This document shows positions 16,758 to 61,579 of a DNA stretch of 64,000 nucleotides, piece by piece. The stretch is from positions 76,632,001 to 76,696,000 of the forward strand of contig OZ286475.1 in the NCBI GenBank assembly GCA_965644265.1, given 5' to 3'. Numbering within the stretch: the stretch's first letter is position 1; every line of letters begins with the position of its first letter. This stretch comes from Glycera tridactyla. Taxonomy: Eukaryota. A program made the position numbers and the translations under genes. Below the pieces are notes generated by a model, which saw nothing but the letters and a program-made list of their open reading frames with translations, searched no databases and was not told where the DNA came from.

Positions 16758-16761
16758 ACTA

Positions 16762-27519: not shown

Positions 27520-27588
<69 letters not shown>
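27517..27588 (+). repeat. (GAT)24 microsatellite at the host/virus junction
   Basis: Perfect 72-bp tract, absent at the paralogous position (10752). Confidence 0.96.
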
Positions 27589-27589
<1 letters not shown>

Positions 27590-27694
27590 ATTAGAAGCAA
27601 ACTCTAACCAACATCCCCTTTTCTCTGTGTGTTTATATAGGGAGCGAAAAAGTATCTCAATAAGCCTCCCGATACTAGACAAGAGCTGTACGAC

Positions 27695-28745: not shown

Positions 28746-28767
28746 CGTCACGAGCGGCAGCTTCCGG

Positions 28768-29940: not shown

Positions 29941-31484
29941 TTTTCTTGACTCTCGACATCGAAGGGGTCTTCGTTTGTGTCTTCGTGAACGTTCTCGTTA
30001 TTCTCCCCAGCTTCCTCTTCCTCTTTCACCGCTTTTCGAAGCGTTTCTTGAAATCTGTCTATGGCCTGTAGAGTTAGGGAAGATAGAACCACTAACGTCT
30101 TGTTAGCCCCCAGACCAATATTCACCCGCTCCCTCAAGGTCTTCTTAACTTTGTGATTGAGAAGACGTCGTCGCCTGGAAGCGTCGTTGGAACAAAGAAC
30201 GGTTTCGCGACTTAGAGGGGGGCCCCACAGGTGATGGTGATTTAAACGCCGATCGCAGAGCACCCACTGATCGGTTGAATCGAGCGGACGCCAGTTGGCG
30301 TACTGGTCTTTGTGCAACTCCGTGAGTATCGTGAGTCGATTTAAAATCCCGCAATGTTCGGAGGTTGTGATCGGCTTTCGTTTCGAGTTGAAGAGGGAAA
30401 GTTCGAAAACGGAGTTGGTTAAGAAAACTTCGAGAGCCTCCACGTCGTTCGGGTCTTCGTCCTCGTAAACTGTTACGGGTCCATCTACTCCCTCTTTCCA
30501 TTCGCCGAAAAACTTTAGGCTTGTGGCGAGACTGTTGGTCGGCTTGCTACTCGGAGTCGATCCCTGCGGCAACCACGTGTTCTTCAGCGTGGTGTGTCTA
30601 TAGGGGTTGTTCGGCAGCGTGGCCTGCTCGGCGGCTCCGTCGTTATTCGTGGTCTTTGGGCCGCCGCCGCGACCGAGCCTGGAACTGTTTTGAGCGGGGG
30701 CTCTGAGACATCCCAGTGGGGAATTCGGGTTGCATATTTCGTCGACGATGTTCCGATGACTTTGAGAATCTTCGTGAACGGCCATGAGTTTCAGGAGAAG
30801 TCTCATGCTCAGACGCCCGTTGTCCACGTAGACCCTGTTGATCGGGTTCGTTTGGGATATGCGCCAATAATAATGCATCATGTCTCGTATGAGAAACACC
30901 TGGTTGGGGCGCGTGCAGTTAGAATAGCTGTTGAAAAGACAGATCTCGAAACATCGCTTATCGACAAGCGCGTTAAGATAGAACGGAAACATGCTGTTCT
31001 CCCAGACGTTCTTTTTTTCGTCGGGCGTCTGCGATTGACGCGCGTAGAGTTCCAGGGCTTGCGTTTGGTCGATGTTCGTGTCGGCGAGGAGCTCGGAGAG
31101 AAATTCTAACCGCTGACTCTTTGCATTCACGTCCACTCCTAGAAAGATCGCCGCGCAGTTTAAGACGCGGAGTTTCACCAAATCGAGTGTTTCGATTTCG
31201 ACAACGTCCTCCAGATCTTTGAAGCAGCGGAGGAGATTTTTTAAAAGGGTCTTTATCTCGTCTAGTTCCTCTTTGTCGGGAAAGCCGTTTAGAGTAGAGG
31301 GTAGAATAAGATCGAGAACGAATCGCTCTAAACTCATCAGGTTGTAGTGCTTGGACGACTGGATGTAAGATATCTCCTCCTGTTCCATCTTCACGGCAAC
31401 GCAGAGCATGGTCTTTAGCACGGTGTTTAAAACCGGTAGGAGAAAATCATCGTGGGCGATCTGCGGGTATCTGAGCGCGTCCAT
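29724..31484 (-). CDS. Orphan viral protein, 586 aa, Leu-rich helical N-terminus
   Basis: Long ATG-initiated ORF with an upstream TATATA at ~31580. The 3' end overlaps the 390-aa gene by 217 bp. Confidence 0.8.
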   Translation of the reverse strand: MDALRYPQIAHDDFLLPVLNTVLKTMLCVAVKMEQEEISYIQSSKHYNLMSLERFVLDLILPSTLNGFPDKEELDEIKTLLKNLLRCFKDLEDVVEIETLDLVKLRVLNCAAIFLGVDVNAKSQRLEFLSELLADTNIDQTQALELYARQSQTPDEKKNVWENSMFPFYLNALVDKRCFEICLFNSYSNCTRPNQVFLIRDMMHYYWRISQTNPINRVYVDNGRLSMRLLLKLMAVHEDSQSHRNIVDEICNPNSPLGCLRAPAQNSSRLGRGGGPKTTNNDGAAEQATLPNNPYRHTTLKNTWLPQGSTPSSKPTNSLATSLKFFGEWKEGVDGPVTVYEDEDPNDVEALEVFLTNSVFELSLFNSKRKPITTSEHCGILNRLTILTELHKDQYANWRPLDSTDQWVLCDRRLNHHHLWGPPLSRETVLCSNDASRRRRLLNHKVKKTLRERVNIGLGANKTLVVLSSLTLQAIDRFQETLRKAVKEEEEAGENNENVHEDTNEDPFDVESQENYERWSADSELFITDFLLSRVSAHANLLAEYTSGFIGMSSSSSSLSSSSLSSVTCPSCILHWNGISVRMRWA

Positions 31485-31671
31485 GGTTGAGAGAGATTAG
31501 AGAGAATTCTGGTTCTTACCCTTAGGTTCTATCGACTATTAGGCACAGAGGACACAAATAAATGGGTCATCGTTATCATCATATATAGATTTATTTTTAA
31601 ATGTACACGGTTACAAGAGACACACATATTAATAAAATAGTTAGAGTCCAGATGAGGATTTGAACCATCTC

Positions 31672-33555
31672 CTATTCTGAATAGCTGCCCTCGCTTTCGC
31701 TATCACTCGTGGACTCGCTATCACTCGCGGATTCGCTTTCGTATTCGCTCTCGTATTCGCTCTTGTTCGTGGTGGTGGTGCTGCTGTCCTTCCCCTTGGT
31801 ATTGCTTTTGTTCTTATTCTGGTCCTCCTTTTTATGTAAGGGAGATCTCGCGCGTACCTGAACCCTGGAGTCGATGGAAGTTTCCTTCTTTATGATATTG
31901 AGGTCTGTCCTATCAACGACTTGTTGGTCGGGTTTGAATGGAGCGGCGTTTAGATCCTGAGTAAACTCGACTGCATTATTGGAGGTCACCGCCATCTTTG
32001 TTTTAATTCGGGGATCCATGTTCATCCCGGCGTCGCCATTCAACCTCATTTTTTTGCTTGAAGTCGCCTCTTCTTCTTCTTTTTGTTGTTTTAGTTTCCT
32101 CTTCGATGATGATGATGCCGCTGACGCAGGTTGGGCCTCGACCCCATTTGTCTTTTCAGTATCGAGGGTAACCATACCGGTGTTCACCCACTCGTCTCTT
32201 CTACGTTTTAGTTCCTCCGTCACATGGTCCGTGACCTTCTGGAAATCGGGGAAAAGTGAGGGATCGCAGCGTCCTCGATGGAGCGCGGATCCAATGGTCC
32301 TCGGGACCAACTTGAAAGTCTGGCCGTTGTGGTGTATCGGTTTGGACAGATAGGGAGTTGTCTCCATGAATTGTTGAGTCCAATACAAACAGGGTGGCAT
32401 ATTCCCATGATACATGGAGCCCTTGCCGTCCTCCTTGGTCACACATTTTGGTAGATGGTAGAATAGGTTGCCGATTACTCGCACGAGGTCATACTTGATG
32501 TTTTTGAACGTAGAGGGGGAGGAGGCGTAGACATTTATCGATGCGTGTTCCCGGTGAATCTCGGGGTCGTAAACGTAATCGGTATTATCGGTTTGATGGA
32601 AACAGAAGATACTCTTCTTCGTCTGTTTCTTTTTTGTAGCTGTCTCGTTGACGGAGCTCTCCTTACTGGATCCCTCTCCCTTCTCCTCCTCCTTCTCCTT
32701 TTTCATTTTTTTAAACTTTGAAGATTGCTCCGACTTGATTTTCCACTCCGGCGCTTTCAGTTCGGCAATAACGGGGGATTTCGAGTTCCTCCCTTCCACC
32801 CCTCTCTTTTCATAGGTGTAGGTGAACAAGAGATTGTAGTTTGCACCCTGAGCGTAAATTTTACCTTGTAGGTTATGCTCTATCGCCGGAATGTATATCT
32901 TCGCGGAGATTTTTACATTTGTTTCGGGTTTTTCGTTTTTCAGGATCTCCTCGTATTTGGAGATCTCGTCCGTCAGACTCTTAAAACTCGTGGCCTTGTC
33001 TCGCTCTTTAATGCAGATGTAGACAATGTAGTTGGGAGCGTTCTCTTCTTCTTTTTTAACACTCTTCGGTTTTAGGAGAATCAACATGTTGACCTTGGAC
33101 TGCCCCATGTTTTTCCAGGGTATGGTTGCGGCGAGTGTTTTACGGAGGTGCTCCTCAAACTCAGCCTCGGTTGTTTTATCGGCATTCTTGATCCTGATGT
33201 GGAGAACAAATCGTTTCCTGTCAGAACCGTTCGTCGATATGCCCCGGGCGGCAAATTCATATCCGATGAACTTTTCCACAAACTGTTGAATGGCGAGGTT
33301 CGGAGCGATCTCCGATATCTGAATGGGTTTGTACTTCTCGGCCATTTTGTTCTTTTCTGCGACTTCCTCTGTCTCCTTTGGTTCTTTTTCAGCGGGCTCC
33401 GAGTCTGTAATACTGGAAACTATATTCGCCATGTCCTGAGAAACTGATGAATCGGCGCTTAATTTATCTTCACTAGCTGTAACGTCACCGCTACTGCCGT
33501 CGCTGCTGACATCGTCGTTGCTGTTGTTGTTGTTGCTGTCACCGAAAGGCCACAT
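31672..33555 (-). CDS. Orphan viral protein, 627 aa, Lys-rich with acidic Ser/Glu repeat tail
   Basis: Long ATG-initiated ORF; AATAAA on the minus strand at ~31588 downstream of the stop. Confidence 0.82.
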   Translation of the reverse strand: MWPFGDSNNNNSNDDVSSDGSSGDVTASEDKLSADSSVSQDMANIVSSITDSEPAEKEPKETEEVAEKNKMAEKYKPIQISEIAPNLAIQQFVEKFIGYEFAARGISTNGSDRKRFVLHIRIKNADKTTEAEFEEHLRKTLAATIPWKNMGQSKVNMLILLKPKSVKKEEENAPNYIVYICIKERDKATSFKSLTDEISKYEEILKNEKPETNVKISAKIYIPAIEHNLQGKIYAQGANYNLLFTYTYEKRGVEGRNSKSPVIAELKAPEWKIKSEQSSKFKKMKKEKEEEKGEGSSKESSVNETATKKKQTKKSIFCFHQTDNTDYVYDPEIHREHASINVYASSPSTFKNIKYDLVRVIGNLFYHLPKCVTKEDGKGSMYHGNMPPCLYWTQQFMETTPYLSKPIHHNGQTFKLVPRTIGSALHRGRCDPSLFPDFQKVTDHVTEELKRRRDEWVNTGMVTLDTEKTNGVEAQPASAASSSSKRKLKQQKEEEEATSSKKMRLNGDAGMNMDPRIKTKMAVTSNNAVEFTQDLNAAPFKPDQQVVDRTDLNIIKKETSIDSRVQVRARSPLHKKEDQNKNKSNTKGKDSSTTTTNKSEYESEYESESASDSESTSDSESEGSYSE

Positions 33556-34621
33556 TTTTAAAATTGTCTTCTATGTGACTAATTACGGCATTTTGCGATA
33601 AATGCGGTTCCCAAATAACACAAGAAAAAGTCCCAGTGTTGTTGATCGAGCTATATTTAGAAATATCGCATGGAAACACGCCGTCTCCCCAATCATGGAA
33701 GGGCATCTTTCCTGTAATCTCGCCCCCTCCCGCCTCATCCTCCGATAAGATCCGACCCCACGCGGAAACATGGTAATTTTCCGCTACGACTTTCCCACAG
33801 AAGATCGGAGCCCCGGTGAAGAGAAATCGGTCACTGTTATCCGGGTCAAGCATCACGTGCGTTCTGGTCTCGCCCACTTGTATGGTTTCGAACTCTAACA
33901 GGATCCTCTCGACATCAAGGTCGTCTAGGACACTGGATATGTCAAGTCTATCGAGATCATCCGATAAGATTAGGCCACTTGTCTCGTTAATAATTCTCTT
34001 AATTAAACTTTCTGTCGAATGAAACAACATTGGTAAATCCGACAGCTCCAATTCGAGGTTCTCCCACTCGTATTCTAGACCGGGCAAGTGAAGTCGAGGA
34101 AAAAGTGACTCTTTCAAGTCGGCTCGTTTTCCGAGTTGGTTGATGATTTTGAGAACATCGCCAGCCTGATTCGAAACATATTTAATCTCACCGCCGCTCT
34201 TTCGCATTTGGATATTTTGAAGACGGTAGTACGCGTTGAAGGCATGTTCTAATTCTTTCTTGAGGATGCGAAGACGCGAATTTCGTCGCTCGGGGGATCC
34301 TTTGGGCACGGGTTTTTTTAATTGATGAATCTGAATAAAAATCTTGATGACGAGATAGATGAACTTTTGCACCTCCCTCCCCCAATTTAAATATGCGGCG
34401 AAGGAGTCGGACGTGCAGTTCCTCAGGATCGAAGATGATATCTTTGAAGTGGCGGGCGGATTCCTTGTCTCTATCCTCTTGACCTCGATATCGAGACATG
34501 CCGACACACTAATATGTGCCGCGTGATCAGCGAATCCTCGCTCATGTATAAAGTCCACATGGTCGGACATTCCGATTCTCGCGTCCGATAATTGGTTAGA
34601 GGGGGGCGATAAGGCCGTCAC
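33539..34621 (-). CDS. Orphan viral protein, up to 360 aa
   Basis: Long ORF whose stop overlaps the 627-aa start by 17 bp. The true start is probably the internal ATG (MSDHVDF). Confidence 0.75.
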   Translation of the reverse strand: MTALSPPSNQLSDARIGMSDHVDFIHERGFADHAAHISVSACLDIEVKRIETRNPPATSKISSSILRNCTSDSFAAYLNWGREVQKFIYLVIKIFIQIHQLKKPVPKGSPERRNSRLRILKKELEHAFNAYYRLQNIQMRKSGGEIKYVSNQAGDVLKIINQLGKRADLKESLFPRLHLPGLEYEWENLELELSDLPMLFHSTESLIKRIINETSGLILSDDLDRLDISSVLDDLDVERILLEFETIQVGETRTHVMLDPDNSDRFLFTGAPIFCGKVVAENYHVSAWGRILSEDEAGGGEITGKMPFHDWGDGVFPCDISKYSSINNTGTFSCVIWEPHLSQNAVISHIEDNFKNVAFR

Positions 34622-34659
34622 GTGATGAGGCCACGTGGGTTTTATGGTGTCCTATATAA
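34619..34659 (+). promoter_or_regulatory. Pol II promoter: two CACGTG E-boxes plus TATATAA
   Basis: CACGTG at 34619-34624 and 34632-34637; TATATAA at 34653-34659. Followed by an ATG-free leader ending in a strong AG|GTGAGT donor. Confidence 0.68.
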
Positions 34660-36348
34660 CTTCAGTCGGGGATCCTCTGCGGAATCGATCCATTCGGGAC
34701 TGGACGACTAACAAGCTTCACCGCCACTAATCACCAGCACTTCGCGGAGCTCTCTGTCTCTGATTTCTTTGTCAGTGGAGCCTCATCCGAGAATCAAACA
34801 AGGGAAGATCCAATCGCGAGGAAAGCGGGATCGCCGATCGATACTTCTTAACAGAGAGATCCATATATAAGGTGAGTTATCGTTTATAAAAACACTTCAA
34901 AGGACCTGGGCAAACATGCGGCCACCTGATTGTTCACACAGGGGGGCTCGATCCCCGATAAAGGGGTTTCTCGGTTCTCACCGTTATCGTCGCCGCCGCC
35001 GCTTCTCACGATCATCATTGTCCTTGTCGCCATGATTGTCCTTGTCGCCGTCGCTCCCGTTCCCCGTTTTGAAGATGGAGGAATATTCAACGGGGTCGAA
35101 TTTGGCTTTACATATGATATCCAATGTGGCTCTCATTATGAAAACCAGAGTATTACACTCTCATGTCGGCGATAACTATAGCGATATCGAGGATTCTTTG
35201 ACTACTAGTAGTGGTGGTGACTCTGGTACTACCGAAAGTAACGGGAGCAATAGCAACGGAGGCCATTTTTATGAACCGGAGAGCGGAAAATTATGCGAGG
35301 ATCACTTTAACTGTAGAGAGTCTCGACTGGTTTTTCTTCGGGGATTCTTTAACGGAGGAAAACATGGTTCCCAAAACACGGATGCGTGAGAGTGCTTATA
35401 TTTACTCCGATTAGTCTATGTATTCGGAAGCTCTTATCTATCTATCTGTCTATCTATCTTTTTGTTTATGTTGCTCTTTATCTGTCTATCTATCCTATCT
35501 ATTTACCTGTCTATTTATCCATCTATCCGCCCATCTACCTACCCATCCATCCATCCATCCATCCATCCATCTACCATCTGTCCATATATTCGTGCCCCCC
35601 TGATCTAATTTTCCTCGTTTCTTTTTCTAATCTTATAGTTGTGGCTGTGTTATTGACGAATATCGGGGAAAGGAGGAAGTAGAAGAGAACGAAGAGGCGA
35701 ACGAGTGGTCCCGCGTTCTACAGTATTTGCGGATAAGCTCCACCTCCATAAAACTTCATCGCCGAGGACTTCGTTCCGGAGAGAAAGTTTTGGCCGGGTC
35801 CGTTGACGGTCTTTATCCGCCCAAAGGATCAGCGGACTTCATCTCGCTAGTTCGACTCCAGACGGTCAACTTACCTTCTGCTCAATCATCGAGGCCGTCG
35901 CCCCCGCCGTCACCCTTCGTTCATGTGCCGACCCCTTTTAGCGCCGCCCGGCGCCCAGTGGAGCGACACGTGGAGAGAATGCAAAACGGTCACGTCACAC
36001 TGAGTCCAAGGAAATCGGATATCTTGATATCTACAGCAATACAGGCTGTTACAGGTAGTGTCAATCACGGGTCTGAAAATACCAGGACGACTAGTCAGAA
36101 CTACGCAGTTATTAGATCTATACTTAATGGGAAATCGCTCAACGATAAAACAACAACACATAAGAGTACCACCCCTAATAATAGTGTCGGTGCTCTCAAC
36201 GGAACTTTTGTCGGGGACGAGGATCTAAGAAGAAGTATTTTTTTTGGTCTTGGTGGCTCCCCTATCGACTTTATTACAGGCGATCTGGAACTTTCGGGGA
36301 GCGCGCTGTCATCATCGGTCTCAAACGATAGGCTGTATTATCATTGTC

Positions 36349-36383
<35 letters not shown>

Positions 36384-36675
36384 GCAATTTATTCAACAAC
36401 GAACCAACTAACAGAAATATATCCAACACAGGTAGAGACAATACCCACACAGGTAGAAGACATATTGCGTAGCGCGATGGATGGTGCAGGTATTGGTGCA
36501 GGAGAGACCATGTTACCTGCGGAGACATTAAGTAATCAAACAATCAATCAATCGGAACTGGATAGTATTTTATCAAATGTGTCTTTTCCAGAGTTCCTCG
36601 ACTTCGCATCACTTCAACCTCTTGGCGACAATAATCTTACTCAAACAATAATACCGCCACCACCACCACAACCAC

Positions 36676-36709
<34 letters not shown>

Positions 36710-39302
36710 CAGTTGGCCAGTGGGAACTCAACCCACAATGGCTCCAAGGAAAGACATTGAGAAATCAGTAGCGGGCAACCAAACACCACCCACAGAAACA
36801 CCACAGAGACCAATATCAAACAAACAAATAGCGAGCAAAACAAAACCCAAATCACCAACACCGCCATCATCTCCAAACAAAACCATACCAAGAAACACTA
36901 AAGAGGGGGATTCTGATAACTTTTCTGACGACGTGCTAACCCTACATCCAGAAGGGGATTGGGATGCGAGTGGTGGTGGTGGTGGTGCTGGTGGTGATGA
37001 CGACCACAATGATAGTGTTGTCGTTTCTGGTTCTGTTCATATCGGGGACAAGTTCTCGGGTGTCGAACCACATCGGTCGAAGAAATCGGGGGGGAAGAAG
37101 AAACGGGGTGTCTCCAAACCAAAGGGGGGTGGGGAATCATCATCATCCTCCTCCAAACCAGACTCGACTTCGAAGAAGGACTCGGGTAGGAAAAGGACTA
37201 GCGAGTCCGCTTCCTCTCCGTCCGAATCGCCTATTAAAGTGTCGTCACCGAGAGGGTTAGAAACCCCACCGGGGAGCGGAAAAACCACGCGGCGAGAAAA
37301 AAAAGAAAATCGAATTCTTCTTCCGAAGATAGACCGGAGGATAAAACGAAGGCCCCTAAAAGAAAAAGGAACCAGAAGGAAGTGTGCGAAAATAGCTTCC
37401 TAGAGAACACTCCCGCGTCAGGAATATCTCGACTATACCTAAGATACCAAAGAAGACGTCGGGTACGTCATCGTCTTCTACTTCTACCCAACAGGCCTCT
37501 ATCACTTCACTGATCTATAAATCTCCTTTGACCCCACAAGAGGAAGTTTCCGAAAATTGTTTCGAATCCCCCACGACGATGAGGCCACGTGGGTTTTATG
37601 GTGTCCTATATAACTTCAGTCGGGGATCCTCTGCGGAATCGATCCATTCGGGACTGGACGACTAACAAGCTTCACCGCCACTAATCACCAGCACTTCGCG
37701 GAGCTCTCTGTCTCTGATTTCTTTGTCAGTGGAGCCTCATCCGAGAATCAAACAAGGGAAGATCCAATCGCGAGGAAAGCGGGATCGCCGATCGATACTT
37801 CTTAACAGAGAGATCCATATATAAGGTGAGTTATCGTTTATAAAAACACTTCAAAGGACCTGGGCAAACATGCGGCCACCTGATTGTTCACACAGGGGGG
37901 CTCGATCCCCGATAAAGGGGTTTCTCGGTTCTCACCGTTATCGTCGCCGCCGCCGCTTCTCACGATCATCATTGTCCTTGTCGCCATGATTGTCCTTGTC
38001 GCCGTCGCTCCCGTTCCCCGTTTTGAAGATGGAGGAATATTCAACGGGGTCGAATTTGGCTTTACATATGATATCCAATGTGGCTCTCATTATGAAAACC
38101 AGAGTATTACACTCTCATGTCGGCGATAACTATAGCGATATCGAGGATTCTTTGACTACTAGTAGTGGTGGTGACTCTGGTACTACCGAAAGTAACGGGA
38201 GCAATAGCAACGGAGGCCATTTTTATGAACCGGAGAGCGGAAAATTATGCGAGGATCACTTTAACTGTAGAGAGTCTCGACTGGTTTTTCTTCGGGGATT
38301 CTTTAACGGAGGAAAACATGGTTCCCAAAACACGGATGCGTGAGAGTGCTTATATTTACTCCGATTAGTCTATGTATTCGGAAGCTCTTATCTATCTATC
38401 TGTCTATCTATCTTTTTGTTTATGTTGCTCTTTATCTGTCTATCTATCCTATCTATTTACCTGTCTATTTATCCATCTATCCGCCCATCTACCTACCCAT
38501 CCATCCATCCATCCATCCATCCATCTACCATCTGTCCATATATTCGTGCCCCCCTGATCTAATTTTCCTCGTTTCTTTTTCTAATCTTATAGTTGTGGCT
38601 GTGTTATTGACGAATATCGGGGAAAGGAGGAAGTAGAAGAGAACGAAGAGGCGAACGAGTGGTCCCGCGTTCTACAGTATTTGCGGATAAGCTCCACCTC
38701 CATAAAACTTCATCGCCGAGGACTTCGTTCCGGAGAGAAAGTTTTGGCCGGGTCCGTTGACGGTCTTTATCCGCCCAAAGGATCAGCGGACTTCATCTCG
38801 CTAGTTCGACTCCAGACGGTCAACTTACCTTCTGCTCAATCATCGAGGCCGTCGCCCCCGCCGTCACCCTTCGTTCATGTGCCGACCCCTTTTAGCGCCG
38901 CCCGGCGCCCAGTGGAGCGACACGTGGAGAGAATGCAAAACGGTCACGTCACACTGAGTCCAAGGAAATCGGATATCTTGATATCTACAGCAATACAGGC
39001 TGTTACAGGTAGTGTCAATCACGGGTCTGAAAATACCAGGACGACTAGTCAGAACTACGCAGTTATTAGATCTATACTTAATGGGAAATCGCTCAACGAT
39101 AAAACAACAACACATAAGAGTACCACCCCTAATAATAGTGTCGGTGCTCTCAACGGAACTTTTGTCGGGGACGAGGATCTAAGAAGAAGTATTTTTTTTG
39201 GTCTTGGTGGCTCCCCTATCGACTTTATTACAGGCGATCTGGAACTTTCGGGGAGCGCGCTGTCATCATCGGTCTCAAACGATAGGCTGTATTATCATTG
39301 TC

Positions 39303-39337
<35 letters not shown>

Positions 39338-39629
39338 GCAATTTATTCAACAACGAACCAACTAACAGAAATATATCCAACACAGGTAGAGACAATACCC
39401 ACACAGGTAGAAGACATATTGCGTAGCGCGATGGATGGTGCAGGTATTGGTGCAGGAGAGACCATGTTACCTGCGGAGACATTAAGTAATCAAACAATCA
39501 ATCAATCGGAACTGGATAGTATTTTATCAAATGTGTCTTTTCCAGAGTTCCTCGACTTCGCATCACTTCAACCTCTTGGCGACAATAATCTTACTCAAAC
39601 AATAATACCGCCACCACCACCACAACCAC

Positions 39630-39663
<34 letters not shown>

Positions 39664-40533
39664 CAGTTGGCCAGTGGGAACTCAACCCACAATGGCTCCA
39701 AGGAAAGACATTGAGAAATCAGTAGCGGGCAACCAAACACCACCCACAGAAACACCACAGAGACCAATATCAAACAAACAAATAGCGAGCAAAACAAAAC
39801 CCAAATCACCAACACCGCCATCATCTCCAAACAAAACCATACCAAGAAACACTAAAGAGGGGGATTCTGATAACTTTTCTGACGACGTGCTAACCCTACA
39901 TCCAGAAGGGGATTGGGATGCGAGTGGTGGTGGTGGTGGTGCTGGTGGTGATGACGACCACAATGATAGTGTTGTCGTTTCTGGTTCTGTTCATATCGGG
40001 GACAAGTTCTCGGGTGTCGAACCACATCGGTCGAAGAAATCGGGGGGGAAGAAGAAACGGGGTGTCTCCAAACCAAAGGGGGGTGGGGAATCATCATCAT
40101 CCTCCTCCAAACCAGACTCGACTTCGAAGAAGGACTCGGGTAGGAAAAGGACTAGCGAGTCCGCTTCCTCTCCGTCCGAATCGCCTATTAAAGTGTCGTC
40201 ACCGAGAGGGTTAGAAACCCCACCGGGGAGCGGAAAAAACCACGCGGCGAGAAAAAAAAGAAAATCGAATTCTTCTTCCGAAGATAGACCGGAGGATAAA
40301 ACGAAGGCCCCTAAAAGAAAAAGGAACCAGAAGGAAGTGTGCGAAAATAGCTTCCTAGAGAACACTCCCCGCGTCAGGAATATCTCGACTATACCTAAGA
40401 TACCAAAGAAGACGTCGGGTACGTCATCGTCTTCTACTTCTACCCAACAGGCCTCTATCACTTCACTGATCTATAAATCTCCTTTGACCCCACAAGAGGA
40501 AGTTTCCGAAAATTGTTTCGAATCCCCCACGAC
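34624..40533 (+). repeat. Head-to-tail tandem duplication (34624-37577 and 37578-40533)
   Basis: Offset 2954 throughout. Junction ...CCCCCACGAC|GATGAGGCC. Copy 1 lacks one A (37280-37284) and one C (37412-37414). Confidence 0.96.
35075..37577 (+). pseudogene. Truncated and frameshifted copy of the spliced IE-like gene
   Basis: Same exons and introns as 38029-41725 (introns 34872-35074 and 35386-35638), but with two 1-nt homopolymer deletions and cut by the duplication junction. Confidence 0.82.
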
Positions 40534-41725
40534 AATAGAAAACGTTACGCACTCTATTCTCAAATCAAGGTCCAAGTCTAGCGCCCATTCTCCACCTCGG
40601 TCTCGTTCTCCTTCCCCTTGTTCTTCCCACTCCTCCTCCTCTTGTTCTCCGAGCCGAAGCCACGATCGAAGCCGAGGTAAAAGCCGAGCTAGAAGCCGAG
40701 CTAGAAGCCGAAGCCAAGATAGAAGTCGAGGTAAAAGCCGAGCTAGAAGCCGAAGCCAAGATAGAACCCAAGATAGAAGCCGAGGTAGAAGCCAAGGTAG
40801 AGCCCGAGGTAAAAGCCGAGCTAGAAGCCGAGATAGAAGTCCAAGCCGAAGCCGAGGACGAAGCATGGGGCCGGAAAGTCGTTCGAATCGCTCTAAGAGT
40901 ATGAGTCGCCATACCGACTCTCATGAGGAGAGAAACCATCATCATCGCCGTGATTGTCGCCGTCGTTATGACGATAATGATGATCGCCGGTATCGCGGTC
41001 GTCGTGATGCTGGTGATAGTTGGCATCGTTCGGATCGTGGGGGGCGCCGGTGTCCTGAAATCGATCAATTTCGAAGTCACATGCGGTCTTTCTGGCAAAG
41101 GGATGGGGGGCGAAGCCACAGTTTTGTAGATTGGAATAGAAGAGGGGAGCGTTCCTTTAGAGAAGGACCAAGTCAAGCACGTTCGGACCACGAATACGAC
41201 TTCGACGATCAGAGCTACGATTGGAGAAACAGATACGGTTTATCTCTTAGTTACGAAGACTATTTAGCCTGGTATCGTTTTCAATCCCAATCTCAGAGTC
41301 ATCATCAGGTGTTGGGGTCGAGACAAGATTCCTCAGTTTGTTACTCCCCACATTCGTCTCTAGATTCGCATCGTCGGCGTTCCCAACAGTCAGACAATTA
41401 TTTTCACGGACAGTCTCACGAATATCCACGACCTTCAGAATTTTCACAATGGCAACCAGAACATCACCACCACCACCCCCTCACTCAGTATCCAAATCAG
41501 GCTCCACAGCCACAGCCACAACTACAACCACCGCCACCGCTACAACCACAATCCCGTGTACATTACAATCCCAATTTCATTCCACAGGAGAACCATGCCC
41601 AGAGAGAGAATCAAAATCAGACCCCAGATCAGTGGTTACGCGGGCCGAACGGTAGAGATGAGGTGGAATCATCGGAGATACCGAGATATTATACGCATAA
41701 ACAAGAGGCACGGGAGACAACATAG
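38029..41725 (+). CDS. Spliced immediate-early-like regulatory protein, ~1147 aa (poly-Q/P/S, basic NLS-like stretches, RS-repeat domain)
   Basis: Exon 38029-38339 joined via GT-AG intron 38340-38592 (polypyrimidine tract, CTAAT-like branch site) in frame to 38593-41725; 3444 nt = 1148 codons. A leader intron 37826-38028 ends immediately before the ATG. The regulatory function is inferred. Confidence 0.8.
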
Positions 41726-42218
41726 TCGCCTGTATAATCCTTCCCGTGGTATCGATGTTATGTGTGTATGTATGTATATACTATTTTGTGATCGCATGTA
41801 TCGAATGTTACGTCATGTTGTGTTATAACCTCTGTAGAGCTTCTCGGGTAGTCTCATTCACACATATGTAGAGAGACGTTTATATAAACTACTAAAACAA
41901 CTCTTTTCTCTTGTGTTTTTATTTTACCGGTATTTGTTCATAGATATTATTATCATCATCATCGCCATCCCTCTGCACCTATTTGATGACCCCCCTCCTC
42001 TTAATTTGTTTTGGGCCTAGAGAGTTAACCTACACTCCGTGACCCACTTGCCTCGTTCCAGAAGGAGGTGTAGACCTGACACAGATTGAGATGGAAGGCG
42101 TATAAGAACTAAACATTCGCCTTTGGGGATTTAGATGAGGATAGAAGAACGGGGAATCGAGTCTTAACAACAACAACTCCCTTCTCAGTATCATTATTTT
42201 AGACGGAGGAACGGGCTT

Positions 42219-44573
42219 GTGATGGCAGCAACCACACATAATGACCCTAACGGGGACATGGCGTGTATCTGGTTGTACCCGGCAGAGTTCTTAACGAAAG
42301 ACGAGCGAATGTTAGGTCAGCAGACAATCTTCCCGTACATGATCAAAAAGATCTTGAAGTTCGGCCCGGTATCCGAATTTTTCACCGATGCTTACAAAAC
42401 CCGACAACTGGTTCGCGTCGATCTTCGGGCCACCAGTAAACTAGCCGAGGATGAAGAGGCTTTGAGAAGAACGACGTTGAACTCGGTCCTACTGGACAAC
42501 AATCCCAAACACGGGAAACCGAACATGGTCGTACTTTGCGATAAGTATCTGCGCCGGCTCCTGAGTATTCTCCTGACTGTGTTTAAATGGAATCAGAGGC
42601 ACATCCACGACAAGGAAATCTATGAAGACATGTTAAAAGTTAAAAGGAACGTGCCGGGGGAAGAATTCGAAAACCTCTCCTTGCTTTCTAAACACAGTTA
42701 TGTGTTTCACGCCCGTTCCAAAGACTTCTTCCACATATCCGGAAACATTTCGGATTCTTATTCGATCTTGGAGCGCCTCGTGGGCAACAAGCTGGTCCCC
42801 TGGTGGTCTACCGCATTTTGGACCAATCTAGATATCGAGGGCATATCCGAGAGCAAAATCTTAAATAAACTGAGGTCGGAGTTTTCAGATTTAGTGAGGC
42901 TCTTTGAGAACTATAACCCTATCCCCGAGGGTTCTTACAGCGCCAACAATGAGCGGGTTTCCATGCCCCTGCAGATTGGTATGCACGTGCACGAAAACCT
43001 CGCACTCCAGCTGATTTCCGACGCTCACATTTACACGAAAGAGGACTGCGCTGGCGGAAAGACCAGAGTGGTGTTTAAGAAACCCGGGCGAACCATTCTT
43101 CCCGGCGGGCTCGTGGGAGCGACCCCAGACGTGGTGGTTTATTTCGCCGATAAACACACCGAAGAAACGGCGATGAATATCGAAAGAGAGGAGGAGGACG
43201 ATCACAGTTGCTTTGATAACTGGGACTGGTCGAACGATCACGAATTCGAACAGGAGGAAGCACCCGCGCCTAACCCGAACGAACATAAACCCTCCAGAAT
43301 ACCCCAATACATATACGAGTTGAAAACACTGACTAGGCGCAGGCTTTCTACCGAATCCATTAAAACCAAGCTCGACGAGTACTACATTGAACACACGTTA
43401 TGCAATGAGGGCGATTCGTCCAGTTTTATTTGGGTAGAAAGCCAAGGAGAGGCGCCCTACTATCACATAACATTGAACGAAGCCGAATCGCTAGGAATCT
43501 ACAACAAAGAGTTGAAGCAGAAAAAGGAGGAGGAGGAAGGGACTGACGCGGATCGTTGTTTTTCGTCGGCCATGAGGGCTGCGTCTCTGGTCATTCACTA
43601 TTTGGACGAGCCCCTACTCCTCCGACCCCCTATGCTAAAACTGAGTTCTGCTCCGCCGAACGCCAAACTCAACGACAAGTATGTCTTCAACCCAGAGAGC
43701 AGAGAAAAAATCTACGATAGAAAAATGAAGACAATGAAAACCGAGGGAGCCCAAAAGGGCTGTTCCTGTGGAGCGATCACAAATCCCTTTTTCCGGGGAT
43801 CCGACTTCCTATCGGCGCGTGTGACAAAAGAAGAAAACGCGAGGATCCAGGGACACCCCTCGCCCATCTGGAAGAAGCTTGAGGCCGGAGGCGATGTTGG
43901 AGATCGGGTCGATTTGAGTAAACATCAACACGGAGCGAACAGACAGCCGACCGAATACAGTAAATTTGACGATCCCCACGTTCTTCTTGCTCACATGGGG
44001 GAACACCGATACATTCTCCCCTGGGATAGTGTCGATGTTGGACATCACGGCTTCATCGGGGACACTCTCAACCCGAGGGCAAAATCTCGATGTGTGCTGT
44101 ACTCTTACGCCGAACCTCTTCAAAAATACGCCGTTATCGATTACGAGGTAGCCCCCTACGTCCTATCGCCAACGTCCGATTACTTCAAACAGATTCTACA
44201 GGAGGTTAACGCGTATCAACAGCTCAACGAGGAAATCCGAGCCTTCATAACGATCGTCTTCTTGTATCGAACCGAATCGGATGATGTCAGTGTAGAGTCG
44301 AATAGAGTGGCGGCAACTTACACGACGGAGGTTCGGATCACAAAAGCAATGATGGCGGTTTACACGGCGAACGTGATTTCTCAGGTTTTTCGAGAACACC
44401 AAGCGATCATTCGTTACTGCAAACAAGACCTCTATCCGGACTCCTGGTCGCACTCTGAGAAGAAAGAGCAGCGGAACCGCGAGCGAAAAACCGTCCAAAT
44501 GTACAAGCCTTTTCTGGACGAACTCGTCGAGGCCCTCCACAACACTAGGACGGAAACGTTTATAATGGGATAG
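42219..44573 (+). CDS. Alkaline exonuclease-like PD-(D/E)xK nuclease, herpesvirus UL12/BGLF5-type, 784 aa
   Basis: Ordered motifs LQIGMHVHENLA, GLVGATPDVVV, YIYELKT and SPTSDYFKQILQE, the last resembling the herpes NPRHPNFKQIL motif as I recall it. ATG at 42222. Confidence 0.8.
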   Translation: MMAATTHNDPNGDMACIWLYPAEFLTKDERMLGQQTIFPYMIKKILKFGPVSEFFTDAYKTRQLVRVDLRATSKLAEDEEALRRTTLNSVLLDNNPKHGKPNMVVLCDKYLRRLLSILLTVFKWNQRHIHDKEIYEDMLKVKRNVPGEEFENLSLLSKHSYVFHARSKDFFHISGNISDSYSILERLVGNKLVPWWSTAFWTNLDIEGISESKILNKLRSEFSDLVRLFENYNPIPEGSYSANNERVSMPLQIGMHVHENLALQLISDAHIYTKEDCAGGKTRVVFKKPGRTILPGGLVGATPDVVVYFADKHTEETAMNIEREEEDDHSCFDNWDWSNDHEFEQEEAPAPNPNEHKPSRIPQYIYELKTLTRRRLSTESIKTKLDEYYIEHTLCNEGDSSSFIWVESQGEAPYYHITLNEAESLGIYNKELKQKKEEEEGTDADRCFSSAMRAASLVIHYLDEPLLLRPPMLKLSSAPPNAKLNDKYVFNPESREKIYDRKMKTMKTEGAQKGCSCGAITNPFFRGSDFLSARVTKEENARIQGHPSPIWKKLEAGGDVGDRVDLSKHQHGANRQPTEYSKFDDPHVLLAHMGEHRYILPWDSVDVGHHGFIGDTLNPRAKSRCVLYSYAEPLQKYAVIDYEVAPYVLSPTSDYFKQILQEVNAYQQLNEEIRAFITIVFLYRTESDDVSVESNRVAATYTTEVRITKAMMAVYTANVISQVFREHQAIIRYCKQDLYPDSWSHSEKKEQRNRERKTVQMYKPFLDELVEALHNTRTETFIMG

Positions 44574-44601
44574 AGGCTTAAGGAGGCGGTTTTTAATATA
44601 T

Positions 44602-45270
44602 TTGTGTATCTATTTGTGTATCCATTCTCGCAAAGCTCTATCGGACCCGCTGTACACGTGGTCCCTCTCCTGTCCGCTGAGCGTATCTAAGATCATCAGA
44701 ACCGTGACCCCGTGCAACAGGTGCATAATAAAGGTGGACTGCGGGTGTCTTCTCCAGGCGCCCGGCGAATTCTACATTCCGCTTCAGGTAGCCGACTGCG
44801 ACCTGTCCACGACGCCGGCCGAGCCAACGATCGTCCCCGCCTACCCGGTAAACTTACCGGTCCTGCACTCTCTGTACAGCGCGGATCAACTCGACGATAT
44901 TCGCGGCAGCTCCGTCAAGGACGACTGGAACAACATAGACATTCCAGAATTTGAGCCGTTCGGGTACGAGTGGAATCAAACGGCGCAGGTTAGCGAAAAA
45001 TATTCTTCCGATCTAAAGAAACTAGCGGAGGAGAGCAGCAAACGAGCGGAGGTCTACCACACAAAGGCGGACGCGATGTTAAAAGAGGCAACGGATTTCA
45101 CTGACTTGAGTCTCAGCCACGCCAAAGATCTGGAGGAAAAGTTTGGCGATCTCAGTTGGTTGGGCACTCTGAATTTCGACACGGCCCAGGCCGGCGGTAT
45201 CATCGGCATAATCATAGTAACTCTGACCTTCATAATGGGCATATATAACTGTTGGCGGGTCACCAGATAG
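44602..45270 (+). CDS. C-terminal part of a class I viral fusion glycoprotein (baculovirus F/env-like); 3' exon or remnant
   Basis: PCNRCIIKVDCGC...FYIPLQVADC...YPVNLPVLHSL Cys pattern, helical stem and C-terminal TM (GGIIGIIIVTLTFIMGIY). No N-terminal ATG; possible splice acceptor at 44634-44635. Confidence 0.62.
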   Translation: MCIYLCIHSRKALSDPLYTWSLSCPLSVSKIIRTVTPCNRCIIKVDCGCLLQAPGEFYIPLQVADCDLSTTPAEPTIVPAYPVNLPVLHSLYSADQLDDIRGSSVKDDWNNIDIPEFEPFGYEWNQTAQVSEKYSSDLKKLAEESSKRAEVYHTKADAMLKEATDFTDLSLSHAKDLEEKFGDLSWLGTLNFDTAQAGGIIGIIIVTLTFIMGIYNCWRVTR

Positions 45271-45307
45271 TAGATTGTCGTCGTCGGATTGCTGAAGGCG
45301 CGTCGAA

Positions 45308-46957
45308 ATGGCCTCTCCGCGGCGCTCCGAAAATGACACTCAGATAGACTACGATACCTACGTGGATTTCATTCTAGAAAACAAAATAGACATAATCTCG
45401 GCGTTTGGAAACACGAGGTACCCGTTCATCCCAAACGAACTCACCGTTTTAGATCCCCTCTCTCAAGGCAACATTCACTTCCAGATAAAGAAGATTTTCG
45501 AGGAGTACCAACGAAAAGGCTGGATCGGCAAGAATCTCCGATACGTTTCCTCGGGACTGATTTCTAAAAAGGGGCTGATCCTGCCGTGTTCAGAGAAAGT
45601 AATCACGGGGCCCGGCGGAGGCCTGACTCTAACGTTCACCAGAGCCCCCGAGGTGGTCATGGGGAAACTGGCCAACCTCTTTTATTTTAAAGACCAAGTA
45701 AACGTCTCGACGGGTAAACGGACCCGCTACGTCAAAGATAGACTCCAAGATCCAACTCTTTATTACGCCATCCTTCAATTGTGTTTTCTACTACAGAGGG
45801 CTTGGAATCCGCCGAATCCGGGCACCGCTCACCCCTTTCGTAAAATCATCTCCGCTCTAGACTTTTTATTCAAGAAGCACACCTCCGCCGATCGCCTGGA
45901 GGAAAAAGAACATCTGCATTACATCCTAGAGAACATTCGGTTCAGCTCCGGCAAGATACTGCGCCGCTTCAACACGTTTCCGTTCAAGAGTCGCTATTCC
46001 TTCATTCACAAGTTCAACACGGAGACCAAACGTTTAAGTCTGGAATTCATAAACGAAGGAGCTCTGCTCCAGATAGCGGACGGGATCAAGCTGACCGAAA
46101 TTCTCCACGCCGAGGAACCCGACATCAACTTCGCGCGTCGCCAAAGCGTCATGGAAGACATCTTAAACACCTCCACGGGACTATCCAGCGAGAACTTGAT
46201 GCAATTGATACAGACCATTCTCCTGATGATGACCAGCGGTCGGGGGGAGACAAACTATCGGGAGTGGGGGGACCTCTCGAAGATTACCGCAAGAACAAAA
46301 GACTACGTGGATCAGGACATGCAGCTGCTGATCGTCAAACTCTCTGCGGCTCTTCGCTCTCGGATCAAAAATAAAATGATACAGTTGAATCACGAGAAGT
46401 GCACCTGCATGGCCAAGTGCGTCGGTCAGGAAATGGGAGCCCATCCGGAACTGACGAATCACTTCATCGACACGATTCACCCAACCTACCATTCGACCCT
46501 CAAGTGCGGCTTCTGCAATCTCTCCAACAGTTTGGAAAACACCACCTCGCAGAGGCCGCGAAAAGTGATCACGCAAGAACAACCCCAGTACCTTTCCTGC
46601 TCGTTGGACGGTTCCACAACGATCTACGCGGAACCCCTCTATTCGTTTAACTACAAACGAGACCCCCACAATCCGTCGGCGCCGATAACAAATGTCTCTG
46701 CTCCGTTTTTCCTTTACCTCACGAGCGTCTGTAACGTCTACGAGGAAACGAAAAAATCCCCGCGGAGTTCTTCCACAGGACGTTTTCTAACCGCCTGTTA
46801 CGGAAATAGACTCTGCGCTCAACGAGTGACGAATAAACTGGCTTCCTTCCTCAACAGCACGAAAGAAAACTCCTCGTCGAACTTCATGCAGAGTCCGCAG
46901 TGGTGGCAGTGTATATCGTGCGAAAACCTTTTAAAGGAGAAGCCCTCTCTGGGTTGA
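45308..46957 (+). CDS. Cys-rich (putative Zn-binding) viral protein, 549 aa, C-terminus cut by the inversion junction
   Basis: Good-context ATG; CTCMAKC, CGFC, CYGNRLC and CISC clusters. The last residues and the stop come from the inverted block starting at 46945. Confidence 0.78.
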   Translation: MASPRRSENDTQIDYDTYVDFILENKIDIISAFGNTRYPFIPNELTVLDPLSQGNIHFQIKKIFEEYQRKGWIGKNLRYVSSGLISKKGLILPCSEKVITGPGGGLTLTFTRAPEVVMGKLANLFYFKDQVNVSTGKRTRYVKDRLQDPTLYYAILQLCFLLQRAWNPPNPGTAHPFRKIISALDFLFKKHTSADRLEEKEHLHYILENIRFSSGKILRRFNTFPFKSRYSFIHKFNTETKRLSLEFINEGALLQIADGIKLTEILHAEEPDINFARRQSVMEDILNTSTGLSSENLMQLIQTILLMMTSGRGETNYREWGDLSKITARTKDYVDQDMQLLIVKLSAALRSRIKNKMIQLNHEKCTCMAKCVGQEMGAHPELTNHFIDTIHPTYHSTLKCGFCNLSNSLENTTSQRPRKVITQEQPQYLSCSLDGSTTIYAEPLYSFNYKRDPHNPSAPITNVSAPFFLYLTSVCNVYEETKKSPRSSSTGRFLTACYGNRLCAQRVTNKLASFLNSTKENSSSNFMQSPQWWQCISCENLLKEKPSLG

Positions 46958-48425: not shown

Positions 48426-48988
48426 AAGCCCGTTCCTCCGTCTAAAATAATGATACTGAGAAGGGAGTTGTTGTTGTTAAGACTCGATTCCCCGTTCTTC
48501 TATCCTCATCTAAATCCCCAAAGGCGAATGTTTAGTTCTTATACGCCTTCCATCTCAATCTGTGTCAGGTCTACACCTCCTTCTGGAACGAGGCAAGTGG
48601 GTCACGGAGTGTAGGTTAACTCTCTAGGCCCAAAACAAATTAAGAGGAGGGGGGTCATCAAATAGGTGCAGAGGGATGGCGATGATGATGATAATAATAT
48701 CTATGAACAAATACCGGTAAAATAAAAACACAAGAGAAAAGAGTTGTTTTAGTAGTTCTTCTTTATATAAACGTCTCTCTACATATGTGTGAATGAGACT
48801 ACCCGAGAAGCTCTACAGAGGTTATAACACAACATGACGTAACATTCGATACATGCGATCACAAAATAGTATATACATACATAGATAGAACCCAAGATAG
48901 AAGCCGAGGTAGAAGCCAAGGTAGAGCCCGAGGTAAAAGCCGAGCTAGAAGCCGAGATAGAAGTCCAAGCCGAAGCCGAGGACGAAGC

Positions 48989-52709: not shown

Positions 52710-52737
52710 AGGCTTAAGGAGGCGGTTTTTAATATAT

Positions 52738-53406: not shown

Positions 53407-53443
53407 TAGATTGTCGTCGTCGGATTGCTGAAGGCGCGTCGAA

Positions 53444-60845: not shown

Positions 60846-60873
60846 AGGCTTAAGGAGGCGGTTTTTAATATAT

Positions 60874-61542: not shown

Positions 61543-61579
61543 TAGATTGTCGTCGTCGGATTGCTGAAGGCGCGTCGAA

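What the first reader, a model, noticed from the sequence alone, without database searches (positions are those of the whole stretch)
34619..41725. Hidden spliced immediate-early-like gene that the ORF track splits in two
Seen: E-box, E-box, TATA, then an ATG-free leader and intron 1 (AAG|GTGAGT...TTTTGAAG|ATG). A 311-nt exon follows, then intron 2 (GC|GTGAGA...TCTTATAG|T), which joins it in frame to the 1014-aa ORF and gives ~1147 aa. The product has a Cys/His-containing N-terminus (CEDHFNC...ACGC), poly-Q/P, Ser-rich and basic tracts and an RS domain. Established: herpes IE regulators are often spliced with non-coding leaders, and GGCCACGTG upstream of TATA recalls the USF site of the adenovirus major late promoter. 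Inference: a host Pol II-driven master regulator or splicing modulator.
Basis: partly seen in the sequence, partly recalled or inferred. Interest (0 to 1): 0.78.

Follow-up and report, generated by a model that had tools for sequence, protein, structure and literature searches.

The report
Duplicated orphan spliced RS-protein gene

Summary
The model (non-coding leader, 203-nt intron, 311-nt exon with the ATG, 253-nt intron, 3,133-nt exon, 1,147 codons) is the best ab initio reading.

The two-E-box promoter exists only in copy 1. The quoted introns are in copy 2. The 558-aa and 1014-aa ORFs are the same sequence twice, not two halves of one gene. The last 322 codons are repeated twice more, inside an 8.1-kb unit present three times.

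The gene lies in a block from about 27590 to 64000. This block is CpG-replete (o/e 1.12), dense in ORFs, and abuts CpG-depleted, LINE-bearing host DNA.

Neither the product nor its neighbours has a detectable relative in Pfam, PDB, IMG/VR, metagenomes, a 5.8-billion-cluster word search or a 1.84-billion-protein HMMER search. The only hits are compositional, to the RS tract.

Best reading: an orphan, Pol II-transcribed, spliced gene of an unclassified, probably viral insert. It encodes an SR-related nuclear protein. "Immediate-early" and "herpes" are untested analogies. Moderate interest.

The parts
27590..64000 (.). Foreign-looking block that holds the gene: GC 0.487, CpG o/e 1.12, 84-93% covered by stop-free stretches of at least 150 codons. 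To its left lies host-like DNA: GC 0.416, CpG o/e 0.52, 22% covered, LINE-bearing. The boundary falls just after a host 91-nt array and (GAT)24.
34619..34637 (+). Two CACGTG E-boxes, 13 nt start to start. The second sits in GGCCACGTG. Both are present only in copy 1.
34653..34659 (+). TATATAA of copy 1, 15 nt after the second E-box.
34624..37577 (+). Copy 1 of the tandem duplication: promoter, leader (about 34686-34871), intron 1 (34872-35074), exon 2 (35075-35385), intron 2 (35386-35638) and the first 1,939 nt of exon 3. Its frame is broken by a one-base homopolymer difference at 37279, and the ORF ends at 37403. A second difference lies at 37411.
37586..37613 (+). Copy-2 promoter: one E-box (37586-37591) and TATATAA (37607-37613). 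It directly follows truncated exon-3 coding sequence of copy 1.
37640..37825 (+). Non-coding leader exon of copy 2. The start site is inferred to lie about 30 nt after the TATA box. No ATG between the TATA box and the donor.
37826..38028 (+). Intron 1. Its donor AAG|GTGAGT is the best of 1,148 GT sites on the + strand of 28-49 kb. Its acceptor ranks 68 of 1,253. It holds two upstream ATGs (37870, 37986) that open short ORFs.
37818..37824 (+). Second TATATAA, overlapping the end of the leader exon and abutting the intron-1 donor. It could be an alternative internal promoter.
38029..38339 (+). Exon 2, 311 nt. The ATG sits in an A(-3)/G(+4) context and opens 103 codons plus 2 nt. It contains CEDHFNC.
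38340..38592 (+). Intron 2. The donor GC|GTGAGA is mediocre (rank 150 of 1,148). The acceptor TCTTATAG| is the 2nd/3rd best of 1,253. The interior is (TATC)n/(CATC)n microsatellite.
38593..41725 (+). Exon 3 with the stop codon, 1,043 full codons. The frame opens only 8 nt before the acceptor (TAA at 38582-38584). The first ATG in this frame is codon 114 (38933).
40049..40324 (+). Basic clusters KKKR, RKKRK and KRKR (residues 486-577 of exon 3), which resemble nuclear localisation signals.
40544..40993 (+). RS tract: 36 RS/SR dipeptides in residues 651-800 of exon 3, encoded by 12/42-nt tandem repeats. The start of the 8.1-kb unit (40759) falls inside it.
41883..41888 (+). TATAAA followed by a T-rich stretch, the only poly(A)-signal-like site soon after the stop. 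The next AATAAA on this strand is at 42864.
40759..48882 (+). First of three 8.1-kb units (the others are 48883-57018 and 57019-64000, the last cut by the window end). Each holds the last 322 codons of the gene, the 784-, 222- and 549-aa ORFs, and an inverted copy (46945-48883) of 41767-43699.
48989..49855 (+). Detached copy of the gene's 3' end (288-codon ORF). A second one lies at 57125-57991.

Best explanation
The locus is an orphan protein-coding gene transcribed by host RNA polymerase II. It lies inside a block of foreign, most likely viral, DNA that is joined to host sequence and has been rearranged into tandem and inverted copies.

Proposed mechanism, all inferred from sequence:
- A TATA box, preceded by one or two CACGTG sites for a host bHLH-zipper factor of the USF/MYC type, sets a start site about 30 nt downstream.
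- A leader exon of about 186 nt with no ATG is spliced to a 311-nt exon. This removes 203 nt that hold two upstream ATGs.
- The first AUG of the spliced RNA has a strong context.
- A second splice removes a 253-nt microsatellite-filled intron and joins the reading frame to a 3.1-kb exon.

The 1,147-residue product is almost entirely low-complexity. It has Q/P-rich and acidic stretches, three basic clusters and a 150-residue RS tract, then an R/D/W/Y/H-rich tail. I infer that it enters the nucleus, is phosphorylated on the RS tract by SRPK/CLK-type kinases, and acts at nuclear speckles or on the transcription and splicing machinery. That makes it an SR-related protein without an RNA-recognition motif.

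Only copy 2 carries the full reading frame. Transcripts from the stronger-looking copy-1 promoter could still reach it by splicing from copy-1 donors to copy-2 acceptors.
For: - All motifs are at the stated positions.
- The E-box/E-box/TATA cluster is unique, found in 0 of 100 shuffles.
- The leader has no ATG, while intron 1 has two ATGs with ORFs of 39 and 47 codons.
- The intron-1 donor is the top-scoring donor of 1,148, and the intron-2 acceptor is 2nd/3rd of 1,253.
- The exon-3 frame is open for 116 codons upstream of its first ATG and closes 8 nt before the acceptor. The chance of that is about 0.004.
- The exon-2 frame hits a stop 3 nt after the donor.
- The model frame is the best of six by codon usage for exon 2 and for the start of exon 3. 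No frame stands out in the leader or the introns.
- Composition, basic clusters and RS density support the nuclear reading.
- The block is foreign-looking by GC content, CpG o/e and ORF density.
- TATATAA also precedes neighbouring ORFs, for example 45242 before the ATG at 45308.
Against: - There is no RNA evidence.
- The intron-2 donor is mediocre (rank 150) and the intron-1 acceptor has A at -3.
- A second TATATAA at 37818 could start transcripts inside the model.
- Codon usage resembles the neighbours only weakly: LLR about 0 against 0.16-0.36.
- There is no AATAAA for 1.1 kb after the stop.
- No viral hallmark gene lies in the window, and no ORF of the block has any relative. The viral origin therefore rests on composition and gene density alone.
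- Intron 2 carries the same kind of tetranucleotide microsatellite as the host half.
- Function is inferred from composition only. The AlphaFold2 model of exon-3 residues 1-234 was uninformative, with pLDDT 30.7.
Confidence: 0.5

Rival explanations
1. The block is not viral. It is an unmethylated, gene-dense island of the host genome, and the gene is a lineage-specific cellular SR-related gene that has been tandemly amplified.
For: - No viral hallmark and no viral relative for any ORF.
- Canonical spliceosomal introns.
- A host-type microsatellite in intron 2.
- RS-domain proteins are typically cellular.
Against: - The change in GC (0.416 to 0.487), CpG o/e (0.52 to 1.12) and ORF coverage (0.22 to 0.84-0.93) is abrupt, within a few hundred bases at about 27590.
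- ORFs of 360-784 codons are packed on both strands with short spacers and TATA boxes.
- There are no repeats or transposons inside the block.
- No cellular homologue exists for three proteins among billions of sequences.
Confidence: 0.2
2. The 2.95-kb tandem duplication is an assembly artefact. The real genome then has a single copy of the gene with the two-E-box promoter, and copy 1's 'frameshift' is a sequencing error.
For: The two copies differ only at two homopolymer runs (A5/A6 and C3/C4), the typical residual error of long-read assemblies.
Against: - The neighbouring 8.1-kb units differ by substitutions and 6-nt indels, so real repeated copies do exist at this locus.
- The junction at 37577/37578 is a clean novel join of coding sequence to promoter.
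- Neither point settles whether the 2.95-kb copy itself is real.
Confidence: 0.35
3. The RNA is not spliced as proposed. Either transcription starts at the second TATA box (37818) and intron 1 is part of the leader, or exon 3 is translated on its own from its first ATG (38933) to give about 930 aa, with the exon-2 ORF a separate small product or noise.
For: - TATATAA at 37818-37824.
- A mediocre intron-2 donor.
- HCMV uses intronic promoters in its major immediate-early locus (PMC7690695).
Against: - Such RNAs would carry two upstream ATGs before the exon-2 ATG.
- 116 open codons upstream of the first ATG of exon 3, ending at a near-best acceptor, would be left unexplained.
Confidence: 0.2
4. 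The gene is a relic. The block is a dead, scrambled insert (truncated genes, inverted pieces) and nothing here is expressed or functional any longer.
For: - Truncated gene copies: copy 1, the 513-aa inverted fragment of the 784-aa ORF, and the detached 288-codon 3' ends.
- Concatemer-like architecture next to host DNA.
Against: - Copy 2 and all neighbouring ORFs are intact over hundreds of codons.
- CpG is not depleted, although the host half is.
- The copies are 99.6-100% identical. If it is an insert, it is very young, and the gene model still describes the parent element.
Confidence: 0.3

Closest known systems
Human cytomegalovirus major immediate-early locus (UL123/UL122)
   Same: The gene architecture is alike: a non-coding exon 1, a common AUG in a short exon 2, a large 3' coding exon, and additional promoters inside the first intron (PMC7690695). 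Here the layout is leader, 311-nt ATG exon and 3.1-kb exon, with a second TATA box at the intron-1 border.
   Different: There is no sequence similarity. No herpesvirus immediate-early Pfam family matches, and no herpesvirus core gene lies nearby. No enhancer array was seen, and the kinetic class is unknown.
Cellular SR-related proteins (an RS domain without an RNA-recognition motif)
   Same: A long RS tract (36 RS/SR dipeptides in 150 residues), basic clusters, and a product that is otherwise low-complexity. The only database matches are to RS tracts of such proteins.
   Different: There is no RRM, PWI or other recognised domain. There is no homology outside the RS tract. The gene sits in foreign-looking DNA.
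Adenovirus L4-33K, and HSV-1 ICP27 as an SRPK1 and SR-protein antagonist
   Same: Both are viral nuclear proteins that act on host splicing through RS-type chemistry. L4-33K has a tiny RS repeat that is essential for its splicing-enhancer activity and nuclear targeting (PMC4346872). ICP27 binds and inhibits SRPK1 (PMC6805999).
   Different: The L4-33K repeat is stated to be too short to count as an RS domain, whereas this tract is full length. There is no sequence similarity to either protein. The functional analogy is an inference.
Adenovirus major late promoter upstream element (USF site GGCCACGTGACC)
   Same: GGCCACGTG lies 15 nt upstream of a TATA box, matching 9 of the 12 bases.
   Different: The flank differs (GGT instead of ACC). 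A second E-box lies 13 nt upstream in copy 1 only. CACGTG is not enriched in the window as a whole: 19 found against 12.8 +/- 3.9 expected. Binding was not tested.

Membership tests
Herpesvirus immediate-early regulators (ICP4, ICP0, ICP27/UL69, IE1/IE2 families) | Sequence membership in one of the curated families | tested here: not met
   Pfam scan of exon 2 and of exon 3, whole and in three pieces: no family at E <= 1 other than two chance-level hits. PDB: no hit.
Herpesvirus immediate-early regulators (ICP4, ICP0, ICP27/UL69, IE1/IE2 families) | Lies in a herpesvirus genome (core genes such as terminase, capsid or polymerase in the same element) | tested here: inconclusive
   None of ten neighbouring ORFs matches any Pfam family. 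However, only about 20 kb of unique sequence of the block is inside the window.
Herpesvirus immediate-early regulators (ICP4, ICP0, ICP27/UL69, IE1/IE2 families) | Transcribed without prior viral protein synthesis | not testable with these tools
   Needs infected cells and a protein-synthesis block.
Classical SR proteins | At least one N-terminal RNA-recognition motif | tested here: not met
   No RRM or other RNA-binding family in Pfam.
Classical SR proteins | C-terminal RS domain of at least about 50 residues, rich in RS/SR dipeptides | tested here: met
   36 RS/SR dipeptides in residues 651-800 of the exon-3 product.
SR-related proteins (RS domain, no RRM required) | An RS domain, nuclear targeting, and speckle localisation or spliceosome contact | tested here: inconclusive
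   The RS tract and basic clusters are present. Localisation and interactions cannot be tested here.
RING / zinc-finger regulators (ICP0-like) | A C3HC4 or comparable spaced Cys/His ligand pattern recognised by a family model | tested here: not met
   Exon 2 has only two Cys (74, 80) and exon 3 begins C-G-C. No zinc-finger family matches.
USF-dependent TATA promoters (adenovirus major late promoter type) | A CACGTG core with GGCCACGTGACC-like flanks upstream of a TATA box, bound and activated by USF | tested here: inconclusive
   The sequence matches 9 of 12 bases, 15 nt from the TATA box. Binding and activation cannot be tested here.

The most novel reading that the evidence does not exclude
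The block from about 27590 onward is a fragment of an unsampled lineage of nuclear, intron-using large DNA virus, captured as a freshly integrated and rearranged concatemer. This gene would be its early regulator. It would be the first virus-encoded protein with a full-length RS domain, made to take over or mimic host SR-protein and SRPK signalling.
Probability: 0.25. Interest if true: 0.7.

Novelty: new member of a known kind. Interest (0 to 1): 0.42.

Why it matters
If the block is viral, it samples a lineage that has no detectable protein relatives among billions of sequences. The gene would then be a viral SR-like factor with a full RS domain, a direct handle on how a virus interferes with host splicing. 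The tandem and inverted copies next to host DNA would also record how foreign DNA was inserted and amplified.

If the block is cellular, or the duplication is an artefact, this is one more lineage-specific low-complexity gene. The main lesson is then practical: duplicated ORFs in an ORF track can be mistaken for the halves of one gene.

Tried and rejected
Homology searches that found nothing:
- Pfam on both exons, on exon-3 pieces and on ten neighbouring ORFs, down to E = 5: nothing credible. The weak PriCT_2, KAP_NTPase and IML1_N hits (E 0.05-0.14) are far below their cut-offs.
- Word search of the 5.8-billion-cluster collection with the 784-aa ORF, with exon-3 residues 1-240 and with the 549-aa ORF: none.
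- Full HMMER search of the exon-3 product against 1.84 billion representatives: six hits at E 1e-4 to 6e-4, all inside the RS tract and all RS-repeat proteins. I rejected them as compositional.
- Exact look-up of four neighbouring proteins: absent.
- IMG/VR scans with seven queries and metagenome scans with two: none.
- PDB sequence search with seven queries: nothing below E 0.09.
- Rfam on the whole window: nothing.

Other attempts:
- AlphaFold2 without an alignment gave unusable models for exon-3 residues 1-234 and for the 784-aa ORF (pLDDT 30.7 and 33.5). I therefore ran no fold search.
- The bacterial promoter/terminator scan is irrelevant to a eukaryotic-type gene.
- Codon-usage scoring supports the frame only weakly.
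- By eye the 784-aa ORF has a PD...ELK pattern, but nothing supports a nuclease assignment.
- The joined spliced product was neither built nor searched.

Full report
**What is in the sequence.**
- CACGTG lies at 34619-34624 and 34632-34637. The second is in GGCCACGTG. TATATAA lies at 34653-34659.
- Copy 2 shows the donor AAG|GTGAGT at 37826 and the acceptor TTTTGAAG|ATG ending at 38028. A 311-nt exon runs 38029-38339. The second donor GC|GTGAGA is at 38340 and the acceptor TCTTATAG|T ends at 38592.
- Exon 2 translates to 103 residues, including CEDHFNC, and leaves GC over. With the first T of exon 3 this makes one Ala codon. From 38594 the frame reads CGCVIDEY... straight into the 1014-aa ORF. 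That gives 103 + 1 + 1043 = 1147 residues.
- I checked the join by arithmetic and by translating each exon by reference. The joined product was neither built nor sent to any search or fold tool; exons were searched apart.

The ORF list shows every ORF between 34.9 and 37.4 kb recurring 2,954 nt further on.
- Self-comparison shows that 34624-37577 equals 37578-40533 over 2,956 aligned columns. The only differences are two one-base homopolymer lengths, at 37279 and 37411. The first breaks copy 1's frame, and its ORF ends at 37403.
- The duplication starts inside the first E-box. Copy 2 therefore has one E-box plus the TATA box, and its "upstream region" is the truncated exon-3 coding sequence of copy 1.
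- The two long ORFs of the ORF track are duplicates, not halves.
- The E-box/E-box/TATA cluster is unique in the window and absent from 100 shuffles. CACGTG as such is not enriched.

**Further rearrangement.** From 40759, inside the RS-coding repeats, an 8.1-kb unit occurs three times, the last cut by the window end.
- Each unit holds the last 322 codons of the gene, ORFs of 784, 222 and 549 aa, and a 1,939-nt inverted copy of the unit's own 41767-43699.
- The units differ by substitutions and by two 6-nt indels, so they are real, distinct copies and not a simple assembly echo.
- Whether the 2.95-kb duplication is real cannot be settled here. Its only differences are of the kind long-read errors make.

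**Is the gene model good?**
- The 211 nt from the TATA box to the first donor hold no ATG. Intron 1 holds two, opening ORFs of 39 and 47 codons. Splicing therefore yields a clean leader and a first AUG with A at -3 and G at +4.
- I scored sites with a rough donor matrix written from memory of published consensus tables and a simple pyrimidine-tract score. The intron-1 donor is the best of 1,148 GT sites on the + strand of 28-49 kb. The intron-2 acceptor is 2nd/3rd of 1,253 AG sites. The intron-1 acceptor ranks 68 and the intron-2 donor only 150.
- The exon-3 frame is open for 116 codons before its first ATG (38933) and closes at TAA 38582-38584, 8 nt before the acceptor. The chance of that is about 0.004.
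- The exon-2 frame stops 3 nt past its donor.
- Intron 2 is filled with (TATC)n/(CATC)n.
- Codon usage trained on six neighbouring ORFs makes the model frame the best of six for exon 2 and for the start of exon 3. The margin is small.
- Weak points: a second TATATAA at 37818-37824 abuts the intron-1 donor. No AATAAA follows the stop for 1.1 kb; only TATAAA at 41883, with a T-rich stretch after it.
- I rate the model as stated at about 0.6.

**The product.** It is low-complexity nearly throughout.
- Residues 1-235 of exon 3 are S/T/P-rich.
- Q12 and P5QPPQ8 runs follow, then G/S/K/D-rich stretches with KKKR, RKKRK and KRKR.
- An RS tract carries 36 RS/SR dipeptides in residues 651-800.
- The tail is R/D/W/Y-rich and then H/Q/P-rich.
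- No Pfam family matches either exon or any piece, and PDB gives nothing.
- AlphaFold2 on exon-3 residues 1-234 alone gave pLDDT 30.7. Without an alignment this is uninformative, though compatible with disorder.
- The Cys/His stretch is two Cys in exon 2 plus C-G-C across the junction. It matches no zinc-binding family.

**Relatives.** None were found.
- The word search with exon-3 residues 1-240 was blank.
- The full HMMER search of the 1,043-residue exon-3 product against 1.84 billion representatives gave six hits at E about 1e-4. All are confined to residues 630-828 and all are RS-repeat proteins.
- Exon 2 was checked against Pfam, PDB, IMG/VR and metagenome contigs only.

**Context.**
- The left 27.6 kb is host-like. 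It has GC 0.416 and CpG o/e 0.52. It carries a LINE with reverse transcriptase and endonuclease domains on the minus strand, dispersed repeats and two N runs, which I left untouched.
- At about 27590, just after a host 91-nt array and (GAT)24, the sequence changes. GC becomes 0.487 and CpG o/e 1.12. Stop-free stretches of at least 150 codons cover 84-93% instead of 22%.
- TATATAA boxes precede other ORFs in the block.
- None of the block's ORFs has a Pfam family or a PDB relative. None has a relative in IMG/VR. The 784-aa ORF also has none in metagenome contigs.
- The 784- and 549-aa ORFs have no relative in the 5.8-billion-cluster word search. Four neighbouring proteins are absent by exact look-up.
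- I read the block as recently acquired foreign DNA, most likely from a nuclear DNA virus that uses host Pol II and splicing, inserted or co-assembled as a scrambled concatemer. This rests on composition and gene density, not on any hallmark gene. I put it at about 0.7.
- No locus from any collection was fetched, and no contig that I would take for human was met.

**Mechanism (inferred).**
- A host bHLH-zipper factor binds the CACGTG site(s) next to a TATA box.
- Pol II transcription and two splices produce the mRNA.
- The basic clusters drive nuclear import.
- The RS tract is phosphorylated by SRPK/CLK-type kinases and mediates speckle or spliceosome contacts.
- The Q/P-rich and acidic stretches resemble activation regions.
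- Because the copies share splice sites, RNA from the two-E-box promoter of copy 1 could still encode the full protein by splicing into copy 2.

**Comparison with known systems.**
- The exon layout parallels the HCMV major immediate-early locus: a non-coding exon 1, an AUG in exon 2, and intronic promoters (PMC7690695).
- The E-box matches 9 of 12 bases of the adenovirus major late promoter USF site (PMC10570711).
- The RS tract recalls cellular SR-related proteins and, functionally, adenovirus L4-33K. That protein's RS repeat is explicitly too short to count as an RS domain (PMC4346872). It also recalls the ICP27-SRPK1 axis (PMC6805999).
- These are analogies. Membership in a herpesvirus immediate-early family, in the classical SR family (no RRM) and in RING or zinc-finger families was tested and not met.

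**Verdict.**
- The new facts are the tandem duplication, the 8.1-kb array, the host/foreign boundary and the complete absence of relatives.
- Interest is moderate.

Noticed in passing
window 40759-64000: An 8.1-kb unit is present three times head to tail, the last cut by the window end. Each unit holds a 1,939-nt inverted copy (for example 46945-48883) of its own 41767-43699. This produces a truncated 513-aa inverted copy of the 784-aa ORF. The units differ by a few substitutions and two 6-nt indels.
   Followed up: partly
window 27148-27640: Sharp host/foreign boundary: a 91-nt x 4 array (also found at 10571-10752), then (GAT)24, then CpG-replete ORF-dense sequence.
   Followed up: partly
window 250-5171 (minus strand): A LINE-type retroelement: reverse transcriptase (1306-2220), an endonuclease/exonuclease/phosphatase domain (3621-4079) and a coiled-coil ORF (4245-5171).
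   Followed up: partly
window 15284-16760 and 22057-23533: 1,477-nt direct repeats, 99.9% identical and 6.8 kb apart. They look like an LTR pair. The 21/42-nt minisatellite at 20113-20543 lies between them.
   Followed up: no
window 8416-10752 and 24738-27329: A dispersed host repeat at 88-92% identity, with an internal 230-237-nt tandem unit.
   Followed up: no
window 28768-29940 and 45308-46957: The 390-aa and 549-aa ORFs share 36% identity over 87 residues at matching positions (pairwise E 1e-4). This may be a small paralogous family inside the block.
   Followed up: partly
window 27695-29940 (+): A gene-like run is broken into four ORFs in different frames (27695-27883, 27777-28082, 28167-28745, 28768-29940). 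The cause could be introns or one-base sequencing errors. Likewise, 33539-34621 and 31672-33555 on the minus strand overlap by 17 nt in different frames.
   Followed up: no
window 44602-45270 and 42219-44573: The 222-aa ORF ends in a hydrophobic C-terminal anchor after a helical, charged stretch. The 784-aa ORF shows ATPD...(acidic insert)...YELK, which looks PD-(D/E)xK-like by eye, but no family match supports that.
   Followed up: no
window 12073-12225 and 13331-13490: Two N runs flanked by tetranucleotide microsatellites. I left them as they are. The coverage count used a placeholder letter for N. It was repeated with N left unchanged and treated as a break; only the host-side figure moved (0.24 to 0.22) and the conclusion is unchanged.
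   Followed up: no
window 34568-34660: The TATATA core is palindromic. The divergent 360-aa ORF (33539-34621, minus strand; first ATG at 34570) starts about 85 nt to its left, so the E-box/TATA region may be a bidirectional promoter.
   Followed up: no
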